This document shows positions 8,724 to 43,876 of a DNA stretch of 64,000 bases, in pieces. A program made the position numbers and the translations under genes. Within the stretch, counting starts at the first letter, position 1. Each line of letters begins with the position of its first letter. The notes beneath the pieces were generated by a model. That model saw only the letters and a list, made by a program, of their open reading frames with translations, ran no database searches and had not been told where the DNA came from. Where the stretch lies: positions 253,984-317,983 of the IMG/VR virus record IMGVR_UViG_3300027793_000052; one strand, written 5' to 3'.

Positions 8724-11717
8724 ATGGAGATTTCAAGTAAAATACTCTCAGACATAACAGTCCACATGAAATACGCTAAGTATGTTCCTGAGTTAAACAG
8801 AAGAGAAACGTGGGAAGAATTGGTGACAAGAAATAAAGAAATGCACCAAAAAAAATATCCACAAATTAAAGATGAAATTGAAAAGGTATATAAATTAGTA
8901 TATGATAAAAAAGTTTTACCCTCAATGAGAAGTCTTCAATTTGGCGGAAAACCAATTGAAATTTCACCGAACAGAATTTACAATTGTGCATACATGCCAA
9001 TTGACCATACGGATTCTTTCGCTGAAGCGATGTTTTTACTATTAGGTGGTACAGGGGTTGGTTATTCGGTACAAAGACATCATGTTGATAAATTACCAGA
9101 AATTAAAAAACCAAACACAAATAGAACTAGAAGATACCTTATCGGTGACTCTATTGAAGGATGGGCTGACGCTATCAAAGTTTTGATTGAATCGTATTTT
9201 GGTTCTAAATCTTCCACCCCTATATTCGATTATTCTGATGTTAGACCTAAAGGTGCAAGATTAGTAACATCAGGTGGAAAGGCACCAGGACCTCAACCTC
9301 TAAAAGATTGTATCCATAACATTAAAAAGATTTTAGATACAAAAAATGACGGTGATAAATTAAAACCAATTGAAGTTCATGATATTGTATGTTTTATCGC
9401 TGATGCAGTTTTAGCTGGTGGTATTCGTAGAGCGGCTTTAATTTCATTATTTTCAGCTGATGATGATGAAATGTTGGCATGTAAATCAGGTAATTGGTGG
9501 GAATTAAATCCACAGAGAGGTAGAGCTAACAACTCAGCTGTTTTAATGAGACATAAAATCACCAAAGAATATTTTATGGACATTTGGAAACGTATTGAGT
9601 TAAGTGGTTCAGGTGAACCTGGTATCTACTTATCTAACGATAAAGATTGGGGGACTAACCCATCACTGAGAGCCGGTACAAAAGTTTTAACAACAGAAGG
9701 TATATTTCCTATTGAAGATTTACAGGATAAAAAGTTTTATGTTAAAAACTTAAATGGTGAAATTAGTGAGGCTAAATGTTGGTTATCTGGTGTGGATAAA
9801 CAATTATGGAAATTAACGTTAAGTGATGGACATGAATATTTTGCAACACCAGAACACGAATGGCCTGTATGGGACGGAACTAAATATATTAAAGTTAAAA
9901 CCCCTGATTTAGTATCTGGAGATAAACTACCAATTTTAAGGGAATCTAAATTATTTGACGGTGATTTAGGTAATTATGAAGATGGTTTCTTATCAGGATG
10001 GTTAATTGGTGACGGATGGGTAACAAATAGAAAAGAATATTCAGAATATGGTATGATAGTTTCTGACTTAGATGATAAATCTAACATATCTGAAAGGTTA
10101 ATTAACACTATTAAAACAAACGTCCCAGAATTTAATGGAAGTTTCAAAAAAAGATTTAGAAAAGAATTTGAAAACCATGAAGAAGAAATGCAAATAATTT
10201 TGGTGGATACTAAAACTAAAGAGATAGGTATTAATAATAAACAAGTTGATACCTATATAAAAAACTTTGGTATTGTGGATAAAAATGTTGGTTTACCTAA
10301 AGCCGTTTGGGAGAATGGTTCCGAAGAATATAGAAAAGGTCTAATAGATGGCTTATTTAGTTCAGATGGTAATATTTCTAAAACACAAAAAAGAATAACA
10401 TTAACTTCTAGTCATAAAAAATTAATTGATGATGTTTCCGAGTTATTAGGTTTTTATGGTGTTAAAACAAAAATTAAACATAAAAAATCTAAATTAGATG
10501 GCTATGATAATGAATTTGATAGGTATGATTTAAAAATTTGTGAAGGAGCGTCTATTAAACATTTCAGAAATTTATTTAAACTAAGTAATAAATATAAACA
10601 AGATATATTAGATTCTTATGAATTCAGATATAATATTGTTGACCCTAAACAGATAGAAGTAGAATCGGTAGAACTAACAAACATTAAGGAAAATGTTTGG
10701 GATATATCTGTCTATGACGAAACACACTGTTTTCAGATATCTAAAGTTGTAACTGGAAATTGTTGTGAGATAGCATTACGTCCTTATCAGTTTTGTAACT
10801 TATGTGAGGTAAACGCTTCAGATATTACATCTCAAGAAGATTTCGAAGAGAGAGTTAAAGCGGCAACATTCATTGGTACATTACAGGCTGGTTACACTGA
10901 TTTCCACTACTTAAGAGATGTATGGAAACGTACAACTGAGAAAGACGCTCTCATAGGTGTTGGTATGACAGGTATTGGTTCAGGTGTTGTATTGGGTTAC
11001 GACATGAAGAAGGCAGCAAAAATATCTAAAGAAGAAAATGAAAGAGTGGCAGGTTTATTAGGTATTAATAAGGCAGCTAGAACTACTACAGTTAAACCTT
11101 CAGGTACTTCTTCATTAGTATTAGGTACATCTTCAGGTATTCACGCATGGCACAATGATTACTATGTTAGACGTGTTCGTGTTGGTAAGAACGAGGCTAT
11201 CTATAGTTACTTATCTATTTACCACCCTGAATTACTAGAGGATGAATACTTTAGACCACATGATACGGCTGTTATTTCTATTCCACAAAAGGCACCAGAA
11301 GGAGCTATTGTTAGAACAGAATCCGTATTCCAATTACTTGAACGTGTTAAAAAGGTTTCACACGAATGGGTTAGAAGTGGTCACAGAACAGGATCCAACA
11401 CACATAATGTATCCGCTACAATCTCTATCAAAGACAATGAATGGGATTTAGTTGGTCAGTGGATGTGGGATAATAGAGACTATTATAACGGATTATCCGT
11501 ATTACCTTACTCAAACCATACTTACAAACAAGCACCATTTGAGGATTGTGATAAAACGACTTATGAAAATTTACTTAAGACATTACACAATATTGATTTA
11601 ACTAAAGTGGTAGAATTGGATGATAATACTGATTTAAGTGAAAATTTGGCATGTTCCGGAAATAATTGTGAGATAGATATAGATCTTAGCAAACTAACAA
11701 AAAACGATGTAGTTTAA
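8724..11717 (+). CDS. nrdJ: Class II (AdoCbl-dependent, monomeric-type) ribonucleotide reductase containing an intein
   Basis: RETW, LPSMRSLQFGG, YNC, GTGVG, VLAGGIRRAA, GEPG, GTNP|CCEI after splicing, TTVKPSGT, C-terminal CSGNNC. Confidence 0.9.
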   Translation: MEISSKILSDITVHMKYAKYVPELNRRETWEELVTRNKEMHQKKYPQIKDEIEKVYKLVYDKKVLPSMRSLQFGGKPIEISPNRIYNCAYMPIDHTDSFAEAMFLLLGGTGVGYSVQRHHVDKLPEIKKPNTNRTRRYLIGDSIEGWADAIKVLIESYFGSKSSTPIFDYSDVRPKGARLVTSGGKAPGPQPLKDCIHNIKKILDTKNDGDKLKPIEVHDIVCFIADAVLAGGIRRAALISLFSADDDEMLACKSGNWWELNPQRGRANNSAVLMRHKITKEYFMDIWKRIELSGSGEPGIYLSNDKDWGTNPSLRAGTKVLTTEGIFPIEDLQDKKFYVKNLNGEISEAKCWLSGVDKQLWKLTLSDGHEYFATPEHEWPVWDGTKYIKVKTPDLVSGDKLPILRESKLFDGDLGNYEDGFLSGWLIGDGWVTNRKEYSEYGMIVSDLDDKSNISERLINTIKTNVPEFNGSFKKRFRKEFENHEEEMQIILVDTKTKEIGINNKQVDTYIKNFGIVDKNVGLPKAVWENGSEEYRKGLIDGLFSSDGNISKTQKRITLTSSHKKLIDDVSELLGFYGVKTKIKHKKSKLDGYDNEFDRYDLKICEGASIKHFRNLFKLSNKYKQDILDSYEFRYNIVDPKQIEVESVELTNIKENVWDISVYDETHCFQISKVVTGNCCEIALRPYQFCNLCEVNASDITSQEDFEERVKAATFIGTLQAGYTDFHYLRDVWKRTTEKDALIGVGMTGIGSGVVLGYDMKKAAKISKEENERVAGLLGINKAARTTTVKPSGTSSLVLGTSSGIHAWHNDYYVRRVRVGKNEAIYSYLSIYHPELLEDEYFRPHDTAVISIPQKAPEGAIVRTESVFQLLERVKKVSHEWVRSGHRTGSNTHNVSATISIKDNEWDLVGQWMWDNRDYYNGLSVLPYSNHTYKQAPFEDCDKTTYENLLKTLHNIDLTKVVELDDNTDLSENLACSGNNCEIDIDLSKLTKNDVV
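9663..10760 (+). mobile_element. Intein (366 aa) with LAGLIDADG homing endonuclease
   Basis: Starts SLRAGTKV; block B ATPEHEW; motifs GWLIGDG and GLFSSDG; ends VWDISV...VTGN before +1 Cys. Removal restores GTNP-CCEI. Confidence 0.92.
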
Positions 11718-16654: not shown

Positions 16655-17436
16655 TAAAATATACCATACAAAATTTATTTCAAGAAATTACTGGGGCAAC
16701 ATCAACATTGACAGGTGGCACGTTGAATGGGTTATATAAATCTATACCTTTACCGATAACTCAAACAATAGCACCGTTGTTTTTTGGTGACAAAATGTTA
16801 GATGTTATAAATGAAGAAAAAGAAAAAATGATAAACCCAATAATTGACGGTGAAACTTTAAAATATAATTTTAATAATTTGACTGCCAACAACAATAAAG
16901 GTTTGTTAATTAGTTTTAAATTTTGGGATCCCAACACTTCTAGTATGAATATGGATTATAGTTTGGCTGGTTTCACAACTGAAGATGTGACAAAAAATAA
17001 AAACGGGTTTAAAAAAAGTTTTTTTAGATTATATTTTTATGACAGTAATGATAGTGAAAATAATTCTTTAATATTTACGGAAGATATTGATGTTGATTAT
17101 ACTTTAAAACCTGAATTTAGTTTAAACCGTTTATATTGGTTAAGAAACGACCAATACTTTGTTGATAATAACACCAACCGAGTTTTATATATGGACGCTA
17201 GATTTTTTAATGCTAAAACAGGCAAAATACACAGATTTATAAACCCACCATCTAATGTTACAATGCCTGTAGATATAAATACATATAAAGACATAAACAA
17301 TAGAGGGTGGAGAACTTCCAGAGTAGAATTTATAAACCCTAAAAATAATAATGGTAATTATAATTTTTTAGTAACACCTAATGTTGGTGCTAACACTAAT
17401 AACACAATAACAATGACAGAGTTTATATTAAAATAA
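16648..17436 (+). CDS. Putative virion structural protein
   Basis: FKKSFFRLYFYDS, YMDARFFNAKTG; operon context. Confidence 0.6.
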   Translation: MLIKYTIQNLFQEITGATSTLTGGTLNGLYKSIPLPITQTIAPLFFGDKMLDVINEEKEKMINPIIDGETLKYNFNNLTANNNKGLLISFKFWDPNTSSMNMDYSLAGFTTEDVTKNKNGFKKSFFRLYFYDSNDSENNSLIFTEDIDVDYTLKPEFSLNRLYWLRNDQYFVDNNTNRVLYMDARFFNAKTGKIHRFINPPSNVTMPVDINTYKDINNRGWRTSRVEFINPKNNNGNYNFLVTPNVGANTNNTITMTEFILK

Positions 17437-19208
17437 TGGAGTTATTTAAAAGAAATGTAGGTTATCAAGACATAGGTAGGGATAGTAATTTAACAATCAC
17501 TGCCACTACAATATACATACCTATATTTTTAACTCAGTCATTTGAAGATTTAGGTCTTTATACAGACACTAAAAACCCAATATTTGACGTTGTTACGGGT
17601 TTTACAGGTATATGGGACACCACGTCTAATACTGGAACAACACAAAAACCTTGTTTGGTTTTAAATAATTGTGGTGTAGGTAACCCTACAATAATAAAAC
17701 CTTCATTTTACGGTGCGTCCGATGCTTCTATTAATGTTAACAATATTACAAATTGTTCACAACAGTATACATTTAAATGGACTGGACCTAATAATTATAA
17801 CAATACAACCACACTGTACCCAACAGGATTAAAGGCTGGTAATTATACATTAAAGATTACAGATAACAATTGTGATATATCCTACCATTCTTTTTTAATT
17901 CCAGAAGCAGAAATTTTAAATACAACAACTTCTTTATTTAATTCTCAAGTTAATGATATTAATGGAACATGTAATGGTTCAGCCTCGGTTGTTGCATCTG
18001 GAGGTTTAGCACCTTACAGTTATAATTGGTTTATAAATACAGGTGTTACGGCCACAACATGGACAAGTTTAGGTTTAACAACTTCTACCATAACTGGACT
18101 TTGTGCTGGTACATATTTAGTTCAAACCACGGATTCCACAGTACCACCAGTAACAGTATCTTCTATTTTTAAAATAACTGAACCAAGTGTATTATCTGGT
18201 AATGTAATAACAACAATCAACGTGGATTGTTTTGGTGGTAATAATGGCGAGATTAATGTTATAGGTTTTGGCGGTAATATGGGTACTGGTTATACCTATA
18301 CATTATCACCTGGATTTATTTCTAATTATACTGGTATGTTTAAAAACATAGGTTCTAATACTTATAGTGTATTAATCACAGATTCCGTAGGATCAACTTA
18401 TAATCTAACACCAATAATTATAACACAACCAGTTGTTGTTAATGCTACCGTAAATTTATTATCAAATGCTGGATGTTTTGGTGGTGATTTAGGTTCTATA
18501 ACTATAAACCCTTTTGGTGGTAACGGATCTTATTCAATAACAGCTTATCGTAATGGTTTACAATATAATTTCTACACTACATCATCATCATTAAATATAA
18601 CCGATTTAGAAGCTTCATTATATACGTTTGATATTACAGATGGTAATGGTTGTACATTTAATGGATTGTCACAAACAGTTTACCACAGAGAAGATTTTGA
18701 TATAACAATAACTAAACCATCACAAATAAATGGTTATGATATACCTTGTTATAGTAATACAACACAAATAACTGCCACGACAACATTCATTTCCGACGCT
18801 TATACATTACCGACGCCCGCTGGTAATATTAATTTTTATGCTAATGGTGTTTATAAAAGTACTTGTTCACACGTATTGGGTAGTGGTTGTACGTCTATAT
18901 TAACAGGTTTAACCGCTGGTGATTACACAATTACAAGCGTATCTAATGTTGGGTGTTCTGCAACAACCTTTGTAACTTTAACACAACCAGAATCAGTTTT
19001 ATCGATAAACTTAGGATTAATTGAAGTTTCGGCGTCTGATAGACAAGGTGTTATAAATATTAACGGTGGTGTTACTCCTTACACTGTTTTATGGAGTGAT
19101 AGTAGTAATGACATAACATCTAACGTACACACTACCGGATACGGCGTATTAAGTGTTACTGTTACAGATAATAATGGTTGCACAGCAACAGATAATATAA
19201 CAATATAA
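17436..19208 (+). CDS. Virion protein with SprB-like repeats (putative adhesin / receptor-binding protein)
   Basis: Repeated units: C.GG..G.I...GG..PY.Y.W ... GL.AG.Y...ITD..GC, ending I.EP/QP. Confidence 0.75.
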   Translation: MELFKRNVGYQDIGRDSNLTITATTIYIPIFLTQSFEDLGLYTDTKNPIFDVVTGFTGIWDTTSNTGTTQKPCLVLNNCGVGNPTIIKPSFYGASDASINVNNITNCSQQYTFKWTGPNNYNNTTTLYPTGLKAGNYTLKITDNNCDISYHSFLIPEAEILNTTTSLFNSQVNDINGTCNGSASVVASGGLAPYSYNWFINTGVTATTWTSLGLTTSTITGLCAGTYLVQTTDSTVPPVTVSSIFKITEPSVLSGNVITTINVDCFGGNNGEINVIGFGGNMGTGYTYTLSPGFISNYTGMFKNIGSNTYSVLITDSVGSTYNLTPIIITQPVVVNATVNLLSNAGCFGGDLGSITINPFGGNGSYSITAYRNGLQYNFYTTSSSLNITDLEASLYTFDITDGNGCTFNGLSQTVYHREDFDITITKPSQINGYDIPCYSNTTQITATTTFISDAYTLPTPAGNINFYANGVYKSTCSHVLGSGCTSILTGLTAGDYTITSVSNVGCSATTFVTLTQPESVLSINLGLIEVSASDRQGVININGGVTPYTVLWSDSSNDITSNVHTTGYGVLSVTVTDNNGCTATDNITI

Positions 19209-37680: not shown

Positions 37681-37887
37681 ATGGGATTTAATAAAAGATA
37701 TGTTAATAAAAAAATAATTAAAACTGTTTTAAGTGAAGACGGTATTGATGCTTTGATAAATTTTATAAAAAAACCTGACGCTCTAATTATTGAGGATGTT
37801 TATTCACAAAAAGTTTGTGACATTATTTTGGACAACCAAAGTGGTGACGATATTTTAAACAAAATATTAAATATAGATAATGGCTAG
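37681..37887 (+). CDS. Small hypothetical protein
   Basis: MGFNKRYV start, 6 nt after TATTTATA. Confidence 0.55.
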   Translation: MGFNKRYVNKKIIKTVLSEDGIDALINFIKKPDALIIEDVYSQKVCDIILDNQSGDDILNKILNIDNG

Positions 37888-38629
37888 AAAAAGAGATAGC
37901 GTTGTTTGGTTGGAACCTAAAGAACATGTTTATATACATAAAGTTACAAATGAAAAATTTAAATCTGTAACAGGTGTTTTATCCATGTTGGAACCTGAAT
38001 TTAACTCTGAAGAAGTTGCATTAGCTATTTCTATGCAAGACCCCTCCAAGAAGAAGGAACAATATCAGAATATGTCTCAAGAGGAGATATTAGCCGAATG
38101 GAAACGTATTAACGATGAGGCTAATGAATATGGTACACAAATCCATGAAATAATGGAAAGGTATCTATTGGCTGACAAAATTTATATACCACAAGATGAT
38201 TATGAAAGGGAATTAATAACTAAATTTCAGGAGATAGATCCAATGACAAAAGGTACAATATACCCAGAAACTATTTTATTCTCTGAAAAACACAAATTGG
38301 CAGGTACTGCTGATATTATAGAGGATTGTGGTGACTACTTTAATGTATGGGATTGGAAAACTAATAAAGCTTTCAGATTTATTTCGGAATATAACCATTG
38401 GTTAAATCCACCTGTATCACACTTATCAGATTGTCAATATAATGTATACGCTTTACAATTATCAATCTACGCTTACATGTTTCAAATGGAAACTAAAAAG
38501 AAAGTGGGTAGATTGGGTATATTCTATTATGATAAAGAACAAGGATTTAAATTAATACCACTACCTTACATTGGTCTTGAGGCAAAGGCCGTACTAGATT
38601 ATTGGGTAAATAAGAACAACAAAAAATAA
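37880..38629 (+). CDS. PD-(D/E)XK exonuclease (RecB/Cas4-like fold)
   Basis: SVT, GTQIH, PE, LAGTADI, WDWKT, YALQLSIY. Confidence 0.85.
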   Translation: MARKRDSVVWLEPKEHVYIHKVTNEKFKSVTGVLSMLEPEFNSEEVALAISMQDPSKKKEQYQNMSQEEILAEWKRINDEANEYGTQIHEIMERYLLADKIYIPQDDYERELITKFQEIDPMTKGTIYPETILFSEKHKLAGTADIIEDCGDYFNVWDWKTNKAFRFISEYNHWLNPPVSHLSDCQYNVYALQLSIYAYMFQMETKKKVGRLGIFYYDKEQGFKLIPLPYIGLEAKAVLDYWVNKNNKK

Positions 38630-38646
38630 ATAATTTGATATATTGA

Positions 38647-38706
38647 TTATTTTTTTATTTCTTTCCTTTTTCCCCCAGTCCACTTATATATTGGTTCTAT
38701 TTTCAT
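38647..38706 (-). pseudogene. N-terminal remnant of a Dam/D12-class DNA adenine methyltransferase
   Basis: Not in the ORF track. Minus strand reads MKIEPIYKWTGGKRKEIKK*, matching the P-x-x-K-W-x-G-G-K N-terminal motif of Dam-family MTases. Confidence 0.6.
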
Positions 38707-38800
38707 TTATTGATTTTTTATCAATAATAACTAAAATAAATAAAAAGTACATAAAAATATTTTTATTGTTGTGTATTTATATCATACAAAAACAAAAGTT

Positions 38801-39109
38801 ATGCAAGAATTAAATTCAATTACCTATCAAGAAAAAATTAATGAAAATAAACTAACATTAGTTAAGTATGCCGCAAATTGGTGTGGGCCATGTCGCATGT
38901 TAACACCCATCTTAAATAAGGTGGTTGAAAATTATACCGATATTAATGTTGGTGAAGTTAATATTGACACACACCCTGATTTGGCTGTTAAAGATGGCAT
39001 TAGAGGTGTACCGACAATAGTTTTTTATAAAAATGGACAAGTTGTTGATAGAATGGTTGGATTACAACCGGCTCAAGTTTACCAATCTAAAATAGATAGT
39101 TTAAAATAA
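38801..39109 (+). CDS. trxA: Thioredoxin
   Basis: WCGPC active site, GVPT cis-Pro; ATG 38801 follows TATTTATA at 38774. Confidence 0.92.
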   Translation: MQELNSITYQEKINENKLTLVKYAANWCGPCRMLTPILNKVVENYTDINVGEVNIDTHPDLAVKDGIRGVPTIVFYKNGQVVDRMVGLQPAQVYQSKIDSLK

Positions 39110-39115
39110 AAAATA

Positions 39116-39673
39116 TTAATCTCTAACACGAAATTCAATAGAAAGACGGTCAAATCCCATCCAACCTTTAACAATTATCCAACGATATTCAAGGTTTGAT
39201 TGAGGAATAAAACCGTCTTTTAGTTGTATACCAATATTAGATTGTGAAATATTATCCAATATTTCTTGACCAACATTCAATCTAACACCATTAATAAATT
39301 TATTATAATTGGTGACAGCCAAATCATAATCCCCATAACCAAATATTTGAATAACTTTATTCACAGCATCATGACTAGCTACCTTAAAAATAGGTTCAGA
39401 ATATAAAGTCCAATCCTTTAATTTATCTTTATTATATTTTTTAATTTCAACACCATCACCATTTGGTGTAATTGCGTCATACTTATGAAAGACACTACCT
39501 TCTATGGGATAAAACTTTGTTGGGTCAAAATCAACCGAAGATATTTTTTGAAAATTAGAACGACCACTTCCTGACCACTTAATTCTAGGTGACTTAGAAA
39601 CACGACGCCAACCTAAGGTCTCACATATGGAATATTCAAAATCCACACCAGTTTTATTTCTACTTTGTCCCAT
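39116..39673 (-). CDS. Putative PD-(D/E)XK endonuclease, restriction-enzyme-like
   Basis: N-terminal helix G-x-x-F-E, KYDA, VEIKK. Confidence 0.55.
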   Translation of the reverse strand: MGQSRNKTGVDFEYSICETLGWRRVSKSPRIKWSGSGRSNFQKISSVDFDPTKFYPIEGSVFHKYDAITPNGDGVEIKKYNKDKLKDWTLYSEPIFKVASHDAVNKVIQIFGYGDYDLAVTNYNKFINGVRLNVGQEILDNISQSNIGIQLKDGFIPQSNLEYRWIIVKGWMGFDRLSIEFRVRD

Positions 39674-39703
39674 TTACAGATTAAGTATTTTAACGTATTA
39701 TTG
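39673..39703 (+). promoter_or_regulatory. Promoter TTTACA-N17-TATTATTG upstream of the first DUF4338-like gene
   Basis: TTTACA 39673-39678; TATTAT 39696-39701. Confidence 0.55.
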
Positions 39704-39735
39704 TAAGTATATAATATTTTTTTAAAAAAGTAAAA

Positions 39736-40884
39736 ATGGCTGAAGTATTCGATACAAAATTAACACCTGAAGAAACAGAATATTTAACCAACAGATTGAT
39801 GGGTTTTTATAGTGAGTTGGAAACTATTCAGGATTATTTCTTAGAACGTAAGAAAGAGAAGGTGGTTGATATTAACCATGATAAGTTCACAAAACTTATG
39901 TTCGATGATTATGGTATCGAACCTAAAGATATGAAATTCGAGATTGAAATAATAGATGGTAAATTATTTAATCCAGCAACACAAATAATCACATCACTAC
40001 CACTTGAATCTCAAATCGGTAGACAAATAATGATAGGTGTTAAAGAAACAAATACCAATAAGTACGTTGGGTTTATTCGTTTAGCTTCACCTGTTTTATC
40101 TATTAAACCACGTAATGATTTATTTCAGGGGTTTAAAATCACAGCTAATGAAGTGAACAAATATATGATTAACGGTGCTATCATTGTACCCGTACAACCA
40201 TTTGGTTATAACTATTTGGGTGGTAAGTTGTTGGCCTTGATTTGTTGTTCACATGAGGCAAGACAAATGTTAAAAGATAAATACGGTGATAAGATAGATA
40301 CGGTATTTATGGAAACCACATCACTTTATGGTGATATTAAAGGGGTTAGTCAATATGACGGTCTTAAACCTTTTATGAGATATGGTAGTATGACAGAATC
40401 CGACTTATTTTTATTCCCTAATGACGATGTTTTTATGGAAATTAGAAATGTGTTAAGACCATTATACGGTAAACCTGAATGGGGTGGTTCTATGGTTGAC
40501 CCTGGTCCATCTGGCCCTAAGATGAGAGAATTTAATAAAATAATCTCTATATTAAAAAACCACTTAAGGGTTCAAAATCCACAGAAATATAAAGAATTTC
40601 ATGACTTTACTAAGTCACATATGAAAGCTAAAACCAAAAAAAGGTATTACTACTGTAATTACGGTTATGATAATATTGGGGCATATATATCTAGTGACGG
40701 TAAAGTACCTTTAGTTAAGAGAGATAATTGGGATAGATACCATTTAACTCACATGATTGATTGGTGGAAGTCAAAAGCACAAAACAGATACGAGACTTTA
40801 AAAAATGATGGTAGATTAAGAAACGATTTGGAGATATACACATTGGATAGGATTGAATCTGGTAATGTTGACATGGTAAGATAA
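39736..40884 (+). CDS. DUF4338 / DruA-like protein, paralogue 1
   Basis: GRQI...VGFIRLASP...KPRN; IVPVQPFGYNYLGGKLLALICCS; ETTSLYG...SQYDGL. Confidence 0.75.
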   Translation: MAEVFDTKLTPEETEYLTNRLMGFYSELETIQDYFLERKKEKVVDINHDKFTKLMFDDYGIEPKDMKFEIEIIDGKLFNPATQIITSLPLESQIGRQIMIGVKETNTNKYVGFIRLASPVLSIKPRNDLFQGFKITANEVNKYMINGAIIVPVQPFGYNYLGGKLLALICCSHEARQMLKDKYGDKIDTVFMETTSLYGDIKGVSQYDGLKPFMRYGSMTESDLFLFPNDDVFMEIRNVLRPLYGKPEWGGSMVDPGPSGPKMREFNKIISILKNHLRVQNPQKYKEFHDFTKSHMKAKTKKRYYYCNYGYDNIGAYISSDGKVPLVKRDNWDRYHLTHMIDWWKSKAQNRYETLKNDGRLRNDLEIYTLDRIESGNVDMVR

Positions 40885-41087
40885 TGTTAGAATTTAAAAA
40901 TCCAATACCAGTAGTAGTTGAAGATAACAAAGAAGGTTATGCCATATATGTAACAAATGGCGGTTCATTTGAGAATGATATATGGTGTGTGGTTCATTGT
41001 GACGGCGGCATTGTTAGACATTACAGAAGTGACCAAATAAAAATACATAATAATTTAACTTTAGATATAAAAAAACATGGACAGTAA
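40884..41087 (+). CDS. Small hypothetical protein (beta-rich)
   Basis: 67 aa, TAATG-coupled; EGYAIY...NDIWCV...GIVRHY. Confidence 0.6.
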   Translation: MLEFKNPIPVVVEDNKEGYAIYVTNGGSFENDIWCVVHCDGGIVRHYRSDQIKIHNNLTLDIKKHGQ

Positions 41088-41478
41088 AAAAGTATCAAAT
41101 CTATTAAGGGCTGTAGCAGACCTTATGGATAACACAACAGAAGTTGTACAAGAAACACAAAAAGATATGGTTAAAACCATAGAAAAGAACACAAATGACT
41201 ATTTAGAACATTCTTTAAAACTTATGAGAAAGATTGAAGATAATGACACAATTAGAGCTTATAAGAATAAAATGGGTAAGCAAAATAAAGTTTTGTCTGA
41301 AGCCTTACTAGAAATACAAAAGTTACGTGAGAATGCTATAGAAGACATGATTAGAGATGCTAAAGGCATATCCAACCCAATAGACTTTTTTAATAAAACT
41401 ATCACTAATAGTGAAAAATTAGGTAGACAGTTTGTTAAAGAAGGTGAAATTTTAAATAAGGCTATTACACAAGAATAA
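41077..41478 (+). CDS. Hypothetical helical protein
   Basis: 133 aa, coiled-coil-like. Confidence 0.55.
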   Translation: MDSKKVSNLLRAVADLMDNTTEVVQETQKDMVKTIEKNTNDYLEHSLKLMRKIEDNDTIRAYKNKMGKQNKVLSEALLEIQKLRENAIEDMIRDAKGISNPIDFFNKTITNSEKLGRQFVKEGEILNKAITQE

Positions 41479-41481
41479 TTT

Positions 41482-42126
41482 ATGTACTGTGAGGTATCAC
41501 CAAGACAATCTGGTAAAACTACAAGGTTGATAACAGCCTTGGTGGAATACCTACGTAACAATATACGTAATAACCATTATGTTGCTTTAGTCACACCTAA
41601 CTCTAATATAACTAAAGATTTACTTAATCTTATTAGAGATAGGTTGGCTATAGAATGTTCTTATGATGTAGGTATGGAATGGCCTAGTGATGGTATATAC
41701 CGATTGGTTGATGATTACCATATGAAACACATCATAACAAAAACAAGGTTTGGTGAGTATAGAAATGAACCTAATATGTGGTTTTTCGATGAGTTTGCCT
41801 CCATACCAATGGATAAAGTTTTACACCCAATTAACCAAACCCTAATAACAAATGCCTATTATTGTACAACACCATCAAATGGTATTAACTTAACAACAGA
41901 TACTATAGTTGAGTATTGTCGAGATAATAATATAAACATTCAATTCCATAACCCTTGGACACCTAATAGACTTAGGGAACAAGGTGGTTTGGAACCTTAT
42001 ATTAGAAATCATGTATTGGGTAGTTGGGTAGAATATATGGCATCAAACGGTTTTAACATAGAAGAGTTAAAATCAGAAATCATTTCAAAATATATTAAAA
42101 AACATCGTTTTATTAATGGTAAATAG
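41482..42126 (+). CDS. Stand-alone P-loop NTPase resembling a terminase large-subunit ATPase domain
   Basis: SPRQSGKTT Walker A, WFFDEFA Walker B, CTTP motif III; no nuclease domain. Confidence 0.65.
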   Translation: MYCEVSPRQSGKTTRLITALVEYLRNNIRNNHYVALVTPNSNITKDLLNLIRDRLAIECSYDVGMEWPSDGIYRLVDDYHMKHIITKTRFGEYRNEPNMWFFDEFASIPMDKVLHPINQTLITNAYYCTTPSNGINLTTDTIVEYCRDNNINIQFHNPWTPNRLREQGGLEPYIRNHVLGSWVEYMASNGFNIEELKSEIISKYIKKHRFINGK

Positions 42127-43066
42127 AGAACAGTTAAAACATGATTTGTTAAATTTTACCTTCTTAACACAGGAAGAACAAAAGGCTAAACAACCCAAGA
42201 AGTACGATTCAATATGGATTAATGAAAGTATTGTAGATGATCCAATAAACATTAAACCATTATTAATACCTGTGGATTCCACTAGTAAACTATGGAGGGA
42301 GTGGAAAAGTGTGGAAGAACATGTGTCTAGTTTCCCATTTAGACGTAGTCCTGGTAGAAATAACTATTTCCTTGTTAAAAACGAGTATGATGGTAAAAAT
42401 CTAGGTATTTTAGATGTGGCTGCCGATTTCTTAGCATTAGGACCAAGAGATAGACACATTGGTTGGAACAAAGATGAAAGAGTTGTTAGAAATAGAAATA
42501 TTGCTAATATATCTGTTTGTGTACCTACTAGACATTTTGGTTATAACATGGCAGGGGGTAAGTTATTAACATTGTTAGCTGCCTCTAATTTTGTTGGTGA
42601 CCATTGGAAATTAAAGTATGGTGATGATTTGGCTGGATTAACTGTAACTTCCTTATACGGTAGAGGTGTACAATACAATAGATTAAAACACTTTAAATAT
42701 TTAGGTCTAACACAAGGACAAGGTACAGTACAGATAGACGAGGACCTATATCAACAAATGAGGTTGGTTGTGGAGGAGGAAGAAGGTGAAATACCTGGAG
42801 GTCAATTTACAAGTGGTAAAAACTCAAGAATAAATATTATTAGAAAGGCTAGTGATTACTTAAATATTGACGCTAGGGTTTTAACAACCCACGGTAATCG
42901 TAGAGGGATTTATTGGTGTGATAGAGGTGATAACACTTCAGAGTTTTTAAGAGGTATTGACAAAGACTTCAAGGTTAAAGAAGGTTTGGATATAGAAACA
43001 CTAACAAACCATTGGAGAGAAAGGTGGGCCTATAAACGTATTGAAAATGTTAAAACTAAAGTTTAA
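42116..43066 (+). CDS. DUF4338 / DruA-like protein, paralogue 2
   Basis: PGRNNYFLV...LGPRDRHIGW; VPTRHFGYNMAGGKLLTLLAAS; TSLYG...QYNRL; LGLTQGQG; W.ERWA.KR. Confidence 0.8.
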   Translation: MVNREQLKHDLLNFTFLTQEEQKAKQPKKYDSIWINESIVDDPINIKPLLIPVDSTSKLWREWKSVEEHVSSFPFRRSPGRNNYFLVKNEYDGKNLGILDVAADFLALGPRDRHIGWNKDERVVRNRNIANISVCVPTRHFGYNMAGGKLLTLLAASNFVGDHWKLKYGDDLAGLTVTSLYGRGVQYNRLKHFKYLGLTQGQGTVQIDEDLYQQMRLVVEEEEGEIPGGQFTSGKNSRINIIRKASDYLNIDARVLTTHGNRRGIYWCDRGDNTSEFLRGIDKDFKVKEGLDIETLTNHWRERWAYKRIENVKTKV

Positions 43067-43087: not shown

Positions 43088-43876
43088 ATGATTAAATCTG
43101 TTGTACACTGTGCTGATATACACCTACGTTTGTTTAAAAGACATGAGGAATATACAGAACAATTTGAGAAGTTTTATAAAGAATGTGAAGAAATACAACC
43201 TGACAGGATTGTTATTGTTGGTGACTTAGTACATTCTAAGAATCAAATGACACCTGAACTTATTTATATGGTTACAACCTTTTTAAATAATTGTTCAAAA
43301 ATAGCTATGACTGTTATTACATTAGGTAACCATGATTTCTTGGCAAACAATTTAGATAGGATGGATGCTTTATCACCCATCATATCCACAATGGATAACC
43401 CTAATATCTTATTTTTAAAACACACAGGCACATACAGAGATGAAAATGTAGTTTGGTGTGTTTATGGACATATGGAAGGTTCTGAGAGACCTAATATAGA
43501 AGAGGCAAGAGAATTATATGGTGATGATGTGACTTATATAGGTTTATATCATGATCCTTTGGTTGGTTTAAAAACTAACGTTGGGTTTGAATTTGAGGAT
43601 GGTAAAGATATCTCTATTTTTGAAGGTTGTGATATGGTTATGTGTGGTGATATCCACAAGTATCAGGTAATGAAACACCGTAAAACACCAATTGTAATGC
43701 CATCATCAATGATTCAACAAGACTTTGGTGAAGACCCATATAACCACGGTTATGTGTTATGGGATATCACAACAAAAGAACATGAGTTGAAGAGATTACC
43801 AAACGATTATGGGTTTTATACTTTTAAAATTAAATCTATTGAGGATATAGAAACAGAGTCAGAGAGATTAGTATGA
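43088..43876 (+). CDS. SbcD / Mre11 / T4 gp47-like nuclease (metallophosphoesterase)
   Basis: ADIH, GDLVH, GNHD, YH, GDIHKYQ. Confidence 0.88.
   Translation: MIKSVVHCADIHLRLFKRHEEYTEQFEKFYKECEEIQPDRIVIVGDLVHSKNQMTPELIYMVTTFLNNCSKIAMTVITLGNHDFLANNLDRMDALSPIISTMDNPNILFLKHTGTYRDENVVWCVYGHMEGSERPNIEEARELYGDDVTYIGLYHDPLVGLKTNVGFEFEDGKDISIFEGCDMVMCGDIHKYQVMKHRKTPIVMPSSMIQQDFGEDPYNHGYVLWDITTKEHELKRLPNDYGFYTFKIKSIEDIETESERLV

What the first reader, a model, noticed from the sequence alone, without database searches (positions are those of the whole stretch)
38647..43066. Candidate phage-borne, methylation-independent restriction/DNA-modification locus: REase-like nuclease, dead MTase, twin DUF4338/DruA-like genes and an ATPase
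Seen: within 4.4 kb lie a minus-strand PD-(D/E)XK protein (39116-39673), a 19-codon Dam-type MTase stub on the same strand downstream of it (38647-38706), and a divergent, tightly packed operon with two DUF4338-like paralogues (39736, 42116) bracketing two small ORFs and a P-loop ATPase. Known: DUF4338 is DruA of bacterial Druantia defence systems and has no established biochemistry; no DruE helicase is present here. Inference: the DUF4338 pair may act as GNAT/Mom-like DNA-base modifiers that protect phage DNA, making the methyltransferase dispensable, while the nuclease cuts unmodified host or competitor DNA. Alternatively they are DruA decoys (anti-defence).
Basis: partly seen in the sequence, partly recalled or inferred. 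Interest (0 to 1): 0.85.

Follow-up and report, generated by a model that had tools for sequence, protein, structure and literature searches.

The report
Jumbo-phage DruA/Mom DNA-modification island
A freshwater jumbo phage carries, inside its DNA-replication genes, two DruA-type (GNAT-like) enzymes, a small ATPase and a restriction-type nuclease; because sister phages have a genuine Mom DNA-modifying enzyme in exactly the place of one DruA gene, this is the first comparative hint that DruA proteins modify DNA bases.

Summary
Both DUF4338 calls hold (Pfam DruA, E=5e-15 and 3.6e-29). The ATPase has intact Walker A and B motifs. The 185-aa minus-strand protein keeps an invariant E..D..ExK nuclease motif.

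Among 36 related phage loci the island sits between the exonuclease and Mre11 genes. Its constant core is DruA-382 plus the ATPase. The gene directly after the ATPase is either DruA-316 or a genuine Mom (PF25680, E=8e-54). Two sister phages differ by exact replacement of that one gene. The DruA-316 model (pLDDT 93.5) finds almost only GNAT acetyltransferases, at weak E-values.

Distant homologues of the nuclease occur only in nuclease/Dam-type MTase/N6_N4 MTase cassettes, so it belongs to a restriction-enzyme family. Its coupling to the GNAT genes is inferred from adjacency only.

The "dead MTase" is a 19-codon ORF with a rare KWTGGK motif. It is separated from the nuclease by the thioredoxin gene, and no relative has an MTase there. 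It cannot be shown to belong to the system.

Mom–nuclease pairs and GNAT+ATPase DNA modifiers were already predicted in jumbo phages. This is a new variant of a known kind.

The parts
37880..38629 (+). PD-(D/E)XK exonuclease of the replication/recombination backbone; left border of the island
   Evidence: Pfam PDDEXK_1 1e-07 and phrog_298 exonuclease 4e-25. It is 79-91% identical in clade-A relatives. In clade-C relatives it abuts Mre11 directly.
38647..38706 (-). 19-codon ORF with a KWTGGKR motif resembling the N-terminus of D12 (Dam-type) MTases; a possible relic, membership doubtful
   Evidence: Translation. The motif is found once against 0.003 expected. It lies in a 141-bp exo-trx gap that is 4-17 bp in most relatives and holds unrelated inserts in others. 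No relative has an MTase there.
38771..39109 (+). Thioredoxin; present with the island in clade A only
   Evidence: Pfam Thioredoxin 2.4e-25. Gene maps.
39116..39673 (-). 185-aa restriction-endonuclease-family nuclease (NUC185), one of the few minus-strand genes in the window
   Evidence: Invariant E13/D66/E76/K78. AF2 model pLDDT 92.6. Atlas feature score 0.95 to a 'restriction endonuclease family' cluster. Homologues sit in NUC-D12 MTase-N6_N4 MTase cassettes. Absent from L006/L019.
39674..39735 (.). 62-bp divergent intergenic region between the nuclease and DruA-382
   Evidence: ORF map. Metatranscriptome contigs break here in two runs. The sigma-70 promoter scan was not informative.
39736..40884 (+). 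DruA-382: DruA-family GNAT-like protein, the constant and most widely conserved island gene
   Evidence: Pfam DruA 5e-15; phrog_19197 4.5e-90. It is 73-91% identical in clade A and 62-70% in clade B. It is 33-38% identical to proteins of T4-like cyanophages and pelagiphage, located in their replication modules.
40884..41087 (+). 67-aa protein of unknown role; variable component
   Evidence: Found only in the window and L002 among clade A. No family hits.
41077..41478 (+). 133-aa helical protein of unknown role; facultative and fast-evolving
   Evidence: 52-62% identical in L002, L005, L006, L017 and L021; absent in L007, L008, L018 and L024.
41482..42126 (+). 214-aa single-domain P-loop (ASCE) ATPase, translationally coupled to the following GNAT gene
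   Evidence: Invariant Walker A and B and a YYCTTP motif. Weak Terminase_6N/AAA hits. Weak match to motif I-Ia of the SF1 helicase GajB, E=0.017. It always lies directly before DruA-316 or Mom, from an 11-nt overlap to about a 12-nt gap. A distant homologue lies next to a DruA-391 gene.
42116..43066 (+). DruA-316: full-length DruA-domain protein with predicted GNAT fold; occupies the slot that holds Mom in sister phages
   Evidence: Pfam DruA 3.6e-29; PADLOC DruA 9.6e-27. AF2 pLDDT 93.5; almost all of the 50 best Foldseek matches are GNAT-type acetyl/acyltransferases, best E=0.079. Exact replacement by Mom in L018 relative to L005.
43088..43876 (+). Mre11/SbcD-like nuclease of the backbone; right border of the island
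   Evidence: Pfam Metallophos 2.2e-12; phrog_100. Gene maps.

Best explanation
The locus is an accessory DNA-hypermodification (anti-restriction) island inserted between the exonuclease and Mre11 genes of the replication/recombination block. The host genome is a 318-kb freshwater jumbo phage.

Proposed working parts (inferred): DruA-family GNAT-fold transferases acylate or aminoacylate an exocyclic amine of a DNA base after replication, as Mu Mom does on adenine N6. DruA-382 is always present. A second enzyme sits in a slot that holds either DruA-316 or a genuine Mom. A small P-loop ATPase is translated in tandem with this second enzyme. It most likely engages or opens DNA, or loads the transferase.

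The divergently transcribed 185-aa protein is a restriction-endonuclease-family nuclease. In other phages it is paired with Dam-type and N6_N4 methyltransferases. Here it probably cuts DNA lacking the phage's modification, that is, host or competitor DNA. This coupling is the weakest step.

Shown: gene content, family membership, synteny, the exact DruA-316/Mom replacement, and the nuclease's association with MTases elsewhere.

Inferred: the substrate (DNA), the chemistry, the ATPase's role, and the nuclease's dependence on the modification.
For: (1) Pfam DruA hits are above cut-off for both proteins.

(2) The DruA-316 model is confident, and almost all of its 50 nearest solved structures are GNAT-type acetyl/acyltransferases. 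A Q/R-x-x-G-x-N plus GGK loop follows strand 4, where GNATs bind the donor. An Aravind-lab paper independently calls DUF4338 a GNAT (PMC10853773).

(3) In 5 distinct relatives the gene after the ATPase is a real Mom (PF25680, 8.4e-54; E=5.7e-14 to the Mu Mom crystal structure 8bv8) instead of DruA-316.

(4) L005 and L018 are sister phages with nearly identical ATPase and DruA-382. Their DNA is collinear at 81-91%, except that DruA-316 (L005 6570-7504) is replaced by Mom (L018 11068-11853), with breakpoints at the gene borders. At least two such switches are needed on the trees.

(5) The ATPase gene overlaps or abuts whichever GNAT follows it.

(6) The island lies among replication and recombination genes. 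DruA-382 homologues sit between DNA polymerase or clamp-loader genes in T4-like cyanophages and a pelagiphage.

(7) Mom is experimentally a GNAT that modifies adenine N6 in dsDNA and blocks restriction (PMC13219725).

(8) The nuclease has invariant E..D..ExK residues. All 8 nuclease-bearing loci among 80 D12-MTase loci have the order NUC-D12-N6_N4, and none has the nuclease without both MTases.

(9) The lineage is under strong anti-restriction selection. GATC observed/expected is 0/92 in relatives without the island, 0.14 with DruA-382 only, and 0.27-0.38 with the full island.

(10) The locus is present in four freshwater metatranscriptome libraries as 100%-identical contigs that break at the intergenic regions.
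Against: No modification has been measured.

DruA-316 and Mom show no detectable sequence or profile similarity. Mom (8bv8) is not among the 50 best Foldseek matches of DruA-316, and those matches are individually weak (best E=0.079).

A slot replacement could also mean a recombination hotspot for accessory genes rather than equivalent function.

Mu Mom needs no ATPase (PMC13219725), so the ATPase's role is unexplained. Its link to TmcA/NAT10 rests only on language-model features and was not seen in a profile search of the PDB.

The nuclease fold has no significant structural match. The nuclease is missing from L006/L019, which keep the GNAT module. It is also missing from clade B and L052.

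The GATC gradient follows phylogeny across only three clades. An MTase elsewhere in the other 254 kb of the genome is not excluded (searches were uninformative).
Confidence: 0.5

Rival explanations
1. The nuclease is an independent selfish or accessory gene. It could be a free-standing homing-type endonuclease or a stray restriction gene used, for example, to degrade host DNA. It merely neighbours the GNAT module. The GNAT/ATPase genes may still modify DNA, so this rival is compatible with the core of the best explanation.
For: The nuclease is on the opposite strand and is cleanly absent from L006/L019, where trx and DruA are only about 60 bp apart. It is absent from clade B and from L052, which keep DruA-382 with or without the ATPase. 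Neighbouring gaps hold other mobile nucleases, such as a GIY-YIG gene in L022 and a NUMOD3-DUF559 gene between two DruA genes in L015. It evolves fast, at 51-66% identity against 79-91% for the backbone.
Against: It keeps the same position and orientation across clade A. Its tree shares the main backbone split, with a three-member Mom clade separate from the rest, so it looks mainly vertically inherited rather than hopping. Its distant homologues occur only with two methyltransferases, as restriction enzymes do.
Confidence: 0.3
2. The DruA-like proteins are acyltransferases acting on proteins or RNA rather than DNA. Targets could be host or phage replication proteins, RNA polymerase, or tRNA.
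For: Most GNATs modify proteins or small molecules. The nearest solved structures are protein or amine N-acetyltransferases and the tRNA-acetylating toxin TacT. Phage GNATs that acetylate host RNA polymerase are known (PMC7824862). No DNA-binding domain was identified by any family search.
Against: The exact in-place exchange with Mom, a proven DNA-adenine modifier, behind the same ATPase. The placement among DNA replication and recombination genes. The association of the DruA domain with DNA-targeting defence systems, namely Druantia and DndF fusions.
Confidence: 0.2
3. One reading: a decayed restriction-modification system. Its Dam-type methyltransferase died, leaving the stub at 38647-38706, because the DruA pair took over protection.
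For: The KWTGGK motif is improbable by chance, 0.003 expected. The nuclease family is paired with a D12 (Dam-type) MTase elsewhere. No [DNS]PP[YFW] amino-MTase motif lies in any credible ORF of the 64-kb window.
Against: In intact cassettes the MTase follows the nuclease directly on the same strand. Here the plus-strand thioredoxin gene lies between them. None of 36 relatives carries an MTase or a longer remnant in the exo-trx gap. That gap holds unrelated insertions in L005, L021, L022 and L026. The stub is 19 codons with no catalytic part, and a DNA search found nothing related.
Confidence: 0.1
4. The phage DruA-like proteins are decoys or inhibitors of host Druantia type I defence, that is, anti-defence by mimicry.
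For: They are members of the DruA family. A relative has an Acb2/Tad1-like anti-defence gene inserted in the same island.
Against: The putative donor-binding loop and seven residues are invariant across phage and bacterial members, which points to a retained enzyme rather than a mimic. The slot is exchangeable with Mom, which is an enzyme and not a Druantia component. The family is conserved in phages of cyanobacteria, Pelagibacter and a phage-like contig filed under Geobacillus, regardless of host Druantia.
Confidence: 0.05

Closest known systems
Phage Mu Mom (Pfam PF25680; PDB 8bv8)
   Same: A GNAT-fold enzyme carried by a phage. Genuine Mom homologues sit in exactly the DruA-316 slot of sister phages. 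Mom modifies adenine N6 in dsDNA after replication and blocks restriction (PMC13219725).
   Different: Neither window protein matches the Mom profile or a small Mom alignment. Mu Mom works alone using Gly-tRNA(Gly). Here a P-loop ATPase is always coupled, and the loop after strand 4 resembles the acyl-CoA-binding motif of classical GNATs.
Mom–REase 'momylation-restriction' pairs predicted in jumbo phages (Iyer et al. 2021, PMC7824862)
   Same: A jumbo phage with a GNAT-type DNA modifier next to a restriction-fold nuclease. The proposed logic is the same: modified self DNA is spared and other DNA is cut.
   Different: There the Mom and REase domains are fused in one protein. Here the nuclease is a separate, divergently transcribed, facultative gene. 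In the window the modifier is DruA-type rather than Mom, and an ATPase is part of the module.
DruA (DUF4338, PF14236) of type I Druantia defence systems
   Same: Same protein family. DruA-316 covers the whole profile at 102 bits. 1051 representative clusters are related to it.
   Different: There is no DruB-E. No helicase of any kind was found in the large window ORFs. The genes are encoded by phages in replication modules, not by bacteria in defence islands.
GNAT + ATPase nucleobase acylation machines: TmcA/NAT10 (ac4C in RNA) and the GNAT+ABC-ATPase DNA-modification system predicted in Tenacibaculum phage pT24
   Same: A GNAT is obligatorily teamed with a P-loop ATPase to acylate an exocyclic amine of a nucleobase. 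This is an analogy drawn from established knowledge and PMC7824862.
   Different: The ATPase here is a separate 190-226-aa single domain of terminase/SF1-helicase type. A profile search of the PDB found no homology to TmcA/NAT10. Only language-model features hint at it.
DpnII-type restriction-modification cassettes (REase + D12 MTase + N6_N4 MTase)
   Same: Homologues of the 185-aa nuclease, 40-43% identical, sit directly upstream of a D12 and an N6_N4 MTase on one strand. From my own knowledge this is the gene set of DpnII/MboI-type GATC systems.
   Different: The window has no adjacent MTase. The nuclease matches no known REase family profile, including DpnII. Its recognition site is unknown.

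Membership tests
Pfam DruA / DUF4338 (PF14236) | Profile match above the curated gathering score (27 bits) | tested here: met
   DruA-316 scores 102.3 bits, covering profile positions 27-297 of 297. DruA-382 scores 55.9 bits, covering 20-184 of 297. PADLOC DruA models also match.
Type I Druantia defence system | DruA together with DruB, DruC, DruD and the large DruE (DUF1998) helicase | tested here: not met
   No helicase or DUF1998 hit in any window ORF of 590 aa or more. The neighbours are phage replication genes. PADLOC found only DruA.
Mom family (PF25680) | Match to the Mom profile, or to Mu Mom itself | tested here: not met
   No Mom hit at E<=1 for either window protein. BLASTP of DruA-316 against a relative's Mom gives E=0.76. 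hhalign probability is 0.2%. The relatives' slot-2 protein does match (8.4e-54; 8bv8 at 5.7e-14).
GNAT superfamily | GNAT fold with a donor-binding loop after strand 4 | tested here: inconclusive
   The AF2 model has pLDDT 93.5. Almost all of the 50 best Foldseek PDB matches are GNAT-type acetyl/acyltransferases, but the best E-value is 0.079 and none reaches 0.001. An R/Q-x-x-G-x-N...GGK loop follows strand 129-137, with G148 and K149 invariant. A published assignment of DUF4338 as GNAT exists (PMC10853773).
PD-(D/E)XK nuclease superfamily (185-aa protein) | Conserved acidic/acidic/lysine catalytic residues (D...(D/E)xK) | tested here: met
   E13, D66, E76 and K78 are invariant in 55 homologues.
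PD-(D/E)XK nuclease superfamily (185-aa protein) | Alpha-beta-beta-beta-alpha-beta core fold recognisable against known members | tested here: inconclusive
   The order of secondary-structure elements fits: H9-20, E23-27, E65-68, E74-77, helix, E89-96. However, Foldseek finds no significant PDB match and only uncharacterised viral proteins. The Atlas lists REase-like clusters as leads.
Type II restriction-modification system | Nuclease gene linked to a cognate DNA methyltransferase gene | tested here: not met
   There is no MTase next to the nuclease, and no [DNS]PP[YFW] motif in a credible ORF of the window. The feature is met for distant homologues: 8 of 8 nuclease-bearing loci have D12 plus N6_N4 MTases. 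The rest of the 318-kb genome was not seen.
D12-class (Dam-type) N6-adenine methyltransferase (the 19-codon stub) | AdoMet-binding and DPPY catalytic motifs in one reading frame | tested here: not met
   Only 19 codons carrying the N-terminal KWTGGKR-like motif are present. A stop codon lies immediately upstream, and the exonuclease gene begins 17 nt away.
ASCE P-loop NTPases (214-aa protein) | Walker A (GKT/S) and Walker B (hhhhDE) motifs | tested here: met
   G11, K12, T13 and D103 are invariant, E104 is conserved (D in a few), and a YYCTTP motif is present, in 43 homologues. There are weak Terminase_6N/AAA hits and a weak GajB motif I-Ia match.
TmcA/NAT10-type helicase domain | Detectable homology to the TmcA/NAT10 ATPase domain | tested here: not met
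   A profile of 43 ATPase homologues searched against all PDB sequences returns no TmcA or NAT10 chain at E<=10. Only Atlas feature neighbours carry PF05127 in a minority of members. The resemblance is an analogy, not membership.

The most novel reading that the evidence does not exclude
DruA (DUF4338), the signature protein of type I Druantia with no known biochemistry, is a DNA-base acyl- or aminoacyl-transferase that is functionally interchangeable with Mom. In phages it works as a two-part, ATP-coupled machine, a small ATPase plus a GNAT, that hypermodifies genomic DNA. If so, type I Druantia would distinguish self from non-self by a DruA-written DNA mark. The phage island would then be a methylation-independent restriction-hypermodification system.
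Probability: 0.35. Interest if true: 0.8.

Novelty: new variant of a known kind. Interest (0 to 1): 0.6.

Why it matters
DruA is a defining component of type I Druantia with no assigned biochemistry. I found no paper assigning it one. The exact in-place exchange of a DruA gene for a proven DNA-adenine modifier, behind the same ATPase, gives a concrete hypothesis for DruA that can be tested by simple expression. It points to a second GNAT route to phage DNA hypermodification, one that needs an ATPase. The family is widespread in large aquatic phages, including T4-like cyanophages and a pelagiphage. A modification there would affect how their DNA behaves in sequencing, restriction and host defence.

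Tried and rejected
1. GATC depletion as a footprint of the phage's own nuclease. GATC is the most avoided 4-mer palindrome in the window (64 observed, 169 expected). But depletion is stronger in relatives without the nuclease: 0 of 92 expected in clade C, 0.14 in clade B, 0.23 in L006. It is therefore lineage-wide and not caused by NUC185.

2. Sequence link between DruA and Mom. BLASTP and hhalign were both negative. A DruA profile searched against PDB sequences found nothing.

3. Fold identification of the nuclease. Foldseek against the PDB and BFVD gave no informative match.

4. Proving the MTase stub. It is too short for the family tools. A DNA search of phage records gave only AT-rich chance hits. 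Relatives show no MTase at that site.

5. Looking for an MTase elsewhere in the genome. Scans of viral contigs with an N6_N4 MTase from relative L007 and a D12 MTase from L011 did not return the window's contig. Only close relatives and the best 80 loci are returned, so this is uninformative.

6. ATPase as a homologue of the TmcA/NAT10 helicase domain. There is no PDB profile hit, so it is kept as an analogy only.

7. Sigma-70 promoter and terminator scan. 28 sites were found against 25.8 expected, so it was not informative in this AT-rich DNA.

8. Minus-strand genes upstream of DruA in L052 as nuclease homologues. They are not. The 239-aa gene between the DruA genes of L015 is not the ATPase. 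It is a NUMOD3-DUF559 nuclease.

9. My early assumption that the phage is marine. The sequencing runs that hold it are mostly labelled freshwater metagenomes.

Full report
**What the window is.** The 64-kb window has about 30% G+C, and almost every gene is on the plus strand. It encodes ribonucleotide reductase, a baseplate wedge protein, a RuvC-like resolvase, primase, a PD-(D/E)XK exonuclease, thioredoxin, Mre11/SbcD, Rad50/SbcC and a sigma factor. It is part of a 318-kb viral contig, IMGVR_UViG_3300027793_000052, so this is a jumbo phage. The public runs that hold it are mostly labelled freshwater metagenomes. SprB repeats in one window protein, and T9SS-type domains in a relative, suggest a Bacteroidota host.

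**Check of the observation.**
- The 382-aa and 316-aa proteins both pass Pfam's DruA threshold (E=5e-15 and 3.6e-29) and PADLOC DruA models. They are paralogues, 33% identical over 156 residues.
- The five plus-strand genes overlap or nearly touch (1, 11, 3 and 11 nt).
- The 214-aa protein has invariant Walker A and B motifs plus a YYCTTP motif in 43 homologues. It gives only weak hits to Terminase_6N/AAA families and to motif I-Ia of the SF1 helicase GajB.
- The 185-aa minus-strand protein has no hit in any family library.
  - E13, D66, E76 and K78 are invariant in 55 homologues.
  - In a confident model (pLDDT 92.6) they fall on the first helix, second strand and third strand, as in PD-(D/E)XK nucleases.
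  - Foldseek found no significant match in the PDB or BFVD, so the fold itself is not confirmed.
- The 19-codon ORF at 38647-38706 is real. Its KWTGGK motif is unexpected by chance, found once against 0.003 expected. However, the plus-strand thioredoxin gene lies between it and the nuclease.

**Comparative anatomy.** I collected 36 related loci using the conserved exonuclease, plus several metagenomic contigs. They fall into three groups.
- *Clade C* (exonuclease 43-49% identical): the exonuclease is followed directly or closely by Mre11. There is no island.
- *Clade B* (66-71% identical): DruA-382 lies between them. Some members also have a 2OG-Fe(II) oxygenase and a short P-loop protein.
- *Clade A* (79% or more): the order is thioredoxin, nuclease (minus strand), DruA-382, zero to three small ORFs, ATPase, a second GNAT gene, then Mre11.

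The second GNAT gene is DruA-316 in the window, L005, L006/L019, L007, L017 and L021. In L002, L008/L023, L018, L024/25 and L026-28 it is instead a genuine Mom. That Mom matches PF25680 at E=8.4e-54 and the Mu Mom crystal structure 8bv8 at E=5.7e-14.

The nuclease is missing only from L006/L019 within clade A. The most distant ATPase homologue (L052) again lies next to a DruA-391 gene, with neither a second GNAT nor the nuclease. T4-like cyanophages and pelagiphage HTVC008M carry a lone DruA-382 homologue between DNA polymerase or clamp-loader genes.

**The key result.** L005 and L018 are sister phages. Their ATPase, DruA-382, exonuclease and primase group together with short branches. Their DNA is collinear at 81-91% identity, with two exceptions. 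One is a small ORF. The other is the slot-2 gene: L005 6570-7504 (DruA-316) against L018 11068-11853 (Mom). Similarity resumes at the gene borders. The ATPase and DruA-382 trees require at least two such switches. A proven DNA-adenine modifier and a DruA protein are therefore exchanged one for one behind the same ATPase allele. This is the best available evidence that DruA-316 does a Mom-like job. It is not proof, because the slot could simply be a hotspot for accessory cassettes.

**Fold of DruA-316.** The model is confident (pLDDT 93.5, pTM 0.90). No PDB match reaches E=0.001. Even so, almost all of the 50 best matches are GNAT-type acetyl/acyltransferases, including KKT23, arylalkylamine and ribosomal-protein acetyltransferases, Naa80, Elp3 and the tRNA-acetylating toxin TacT. 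After strand 129-137 comes R-H-F-G-Y-N-M-A-G-G-K, with G148 and K149 invariant. DruA-382 has Q-P-F-G-Y-N-Y-L-G-G-K at the same place. This resembles the Q/R-x-x-G-x-G/A donor-binding loop of classical GNATs, an observation from my own knowledge of that motif. An Aravind-lab paper also assigns DUF4338 to the GNATs (PMC10853773). DruA-316 and Mom are not detectably similar in sequence, and Mom is not among the listed structural matches.

**The nuclease family.** It has 126 homologue clusters, mostly from metagenomes. Homologues that are 40-43% identical sit directly upstream of a D12 (Dam-type) MTase and an N6_N4 MTase in unrelated phages. Among 80 loci holding that D12 MTase, 8 are NUC-D12-N6_N4, 4 are D12-N6_N4, and 68 have the D12 MTase alone. 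The nuclease never occurs without both MTases. That is the pattern of a restriction enzyme. From my own knowledge, this gene set matches DpnII/MboI-type GATC systems. In the jumbo-phage clade the nuclease has no adjacent MTase, and the window has no amino-MTase motif in a credible ORF. Only 64 of 318 kb were seen.

**The MTase stub.** In most relatives the exonuclease-thioredoxin gap is 4-17 bp. In others it holds a GIY-YIG homing endonuclease (L022), a 200-aa gene (L005) or other small genes. No relative has an MTase there. The stub may be a relic of some inserted orphan MTase, but nothing ties it to the nuclease.

**Selection on restriction sites.** GATC is the most avoided 4-mer palindrome in the window (64 observed, 169 expected, z=-8.1). 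The depletion is lineage-wide: 0 of 92 expected in clade C, 0.14 in clade B, 0.27 in clade A, and 0.23 in L006, which lacks the nuclease. The phage's own nuclease therefore does not cause it. It does show strong pressure from GATC-type (and CCGG-type) restriction. The pressure appears relaxed where the full GNAT island is present. That would fit a protective modification, but the pattern rests on three clades and follows phylogeny.

**Rates of evolution.** Between the window and clade-A relatives, DruA-382 (73-91% identical) and DruA-316 (81-85%) are as conserved as the replication genes. The ATPase (37-47%), the 133-aa protein (52-62%) and the nuclease (51-66%) evolve much faster.

**Expression.** Four freshwater metatranscriptome libraries hold the locus as 100%-identical contigs. 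In the two best-covered runs the contigs break near 38700-38733 and 39661-39742, which are the intergenic regions. One contig spans DruA-382 through most of DruA-316. Carry-over of DNA into these libraries cannot be excluded.

**Prior art.**
- Mom is now known to transfer glycine from Gly-tRNA(Gly) to adenine N6 in dsDNA, and it works without partner proteins (PMC13219725).
- Iyer et al. (PMC7824862) predicted Mom domains fused to restriction-fold nucleases in jumbo phages. They also predicted a GNAT+ABC-ATPase system for an unknown DNA acyl modification.
- The Phold preprint noted DruA-like proteins in six Synechococcus phages.
- One cyanophage homologue of DruA-382 is annotated 'methylcarbamoylase mom' on structural grounds (PMC12801897).
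- I found no description of the DruA pair plus ATPase module, of the DruA/Mom exchange, or of a biochemical function for DruA.

**Verdict.** The GNAT/Mom-like reading is the best-supported explanation (confidence about 0.5). The nuclease's membership of a restriction family is well supported. Its functional coupling to the GNAT genes remains an inference. This is a new variant of the predicted momylation-restriction and GNAT+ATPase kinds. Its main value is that it makes DruA's function directly testable.

Noticed in passing
window 1-64000; L042-L044, L030-L041: GATC is strongly depleted (window 64 observed, 169 expected). It is totally absent from 40.8 kb of island-less relatives (0 of 92 expected). 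CCGG is also depleted. Within the window, depletion is weakest at 16-32 kb, the structural genes.
   Followed up: yes
L002 6407-6769 (also L003 1183-1545): A 120-aa gene with an Acb2/Tad1 hairpin domain (PF24729, 6e-07), the fold of anti-CBASS/Thoeris nucleotide sponges. It is inserted inside the island between DruA-382 and the 67-aa gene in one relative.
   Followed up: partly
L022 7798-8484; L005 2681-3283; L026 2085-2483: The exonuclease-thioredoxin gap is an insertion hotspot. It holds a GIY-YIG homing-endonuclease-like gene in L022 and unrelated genes in L005 and L026.
   Followed up: partly
L006 8384-10474 (same in L019): The Mre11 gene is split into two pieces (residues 1-193 and 198-261). 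About 1.3 kb lies between them and includes a 279-aa protein with a weak Tn7 TnsA-like endonuclease hit, suggesting a mobile insertion in mre11.
   Followed up: no
L015 5325-7972: Another jumbo-phage contig (364 kb) has two DruA-family genes (233 and 323 aa) flanking a NUMOD3 + DUF559 (Vsr-like) endonuclease gene. This is a second, independent case of a nuclease beside phage DruA genes.
   Followed up: partly
L014 7001-7975: A protein 63% identical to DruA-316 is filed under Geobacillus thermodenitrificans. It lies on a 118-kb phage-like contig next to DNA polymerase III alpha and ribonucleotide reductase genes. The DruA-316 type therefore spans phages of very different hosts.
   Followed up: partly
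window 17436-19208; L008 7701-10059: SprB repeats occur in a window protein. CHU_C, PKD and Por_Secre_tail (T9SS) domains occur in a relative's genes. Both point to a Bacteroidota host.
   Followed up: no
window 41482-42126, 41077-41478, 39116-39673: The ATPase, the 133-aa protein and the nuclease are only 37-66% identical between phages whose replication genes and DruA genes are 73-91% identical. These are unusually fast-evolving members of the island.
   Followed up: partly
L007 8166-9122 and 9172-9975: One relative carries an N6_N4 DNA methyltransferase two genes after DruA-316. Its Mre11 gene is on the opposite strand and only 45% identical, which suggests local rearrangement or replacement.
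   Followed up: partly
window 8724-11717: The ribonucleotide reductase ORF is 997 aa, but the matching PHROG profile is 701 positions long. It may hold an insertion, possibly an intein or an extra domain.
   Followed up: no
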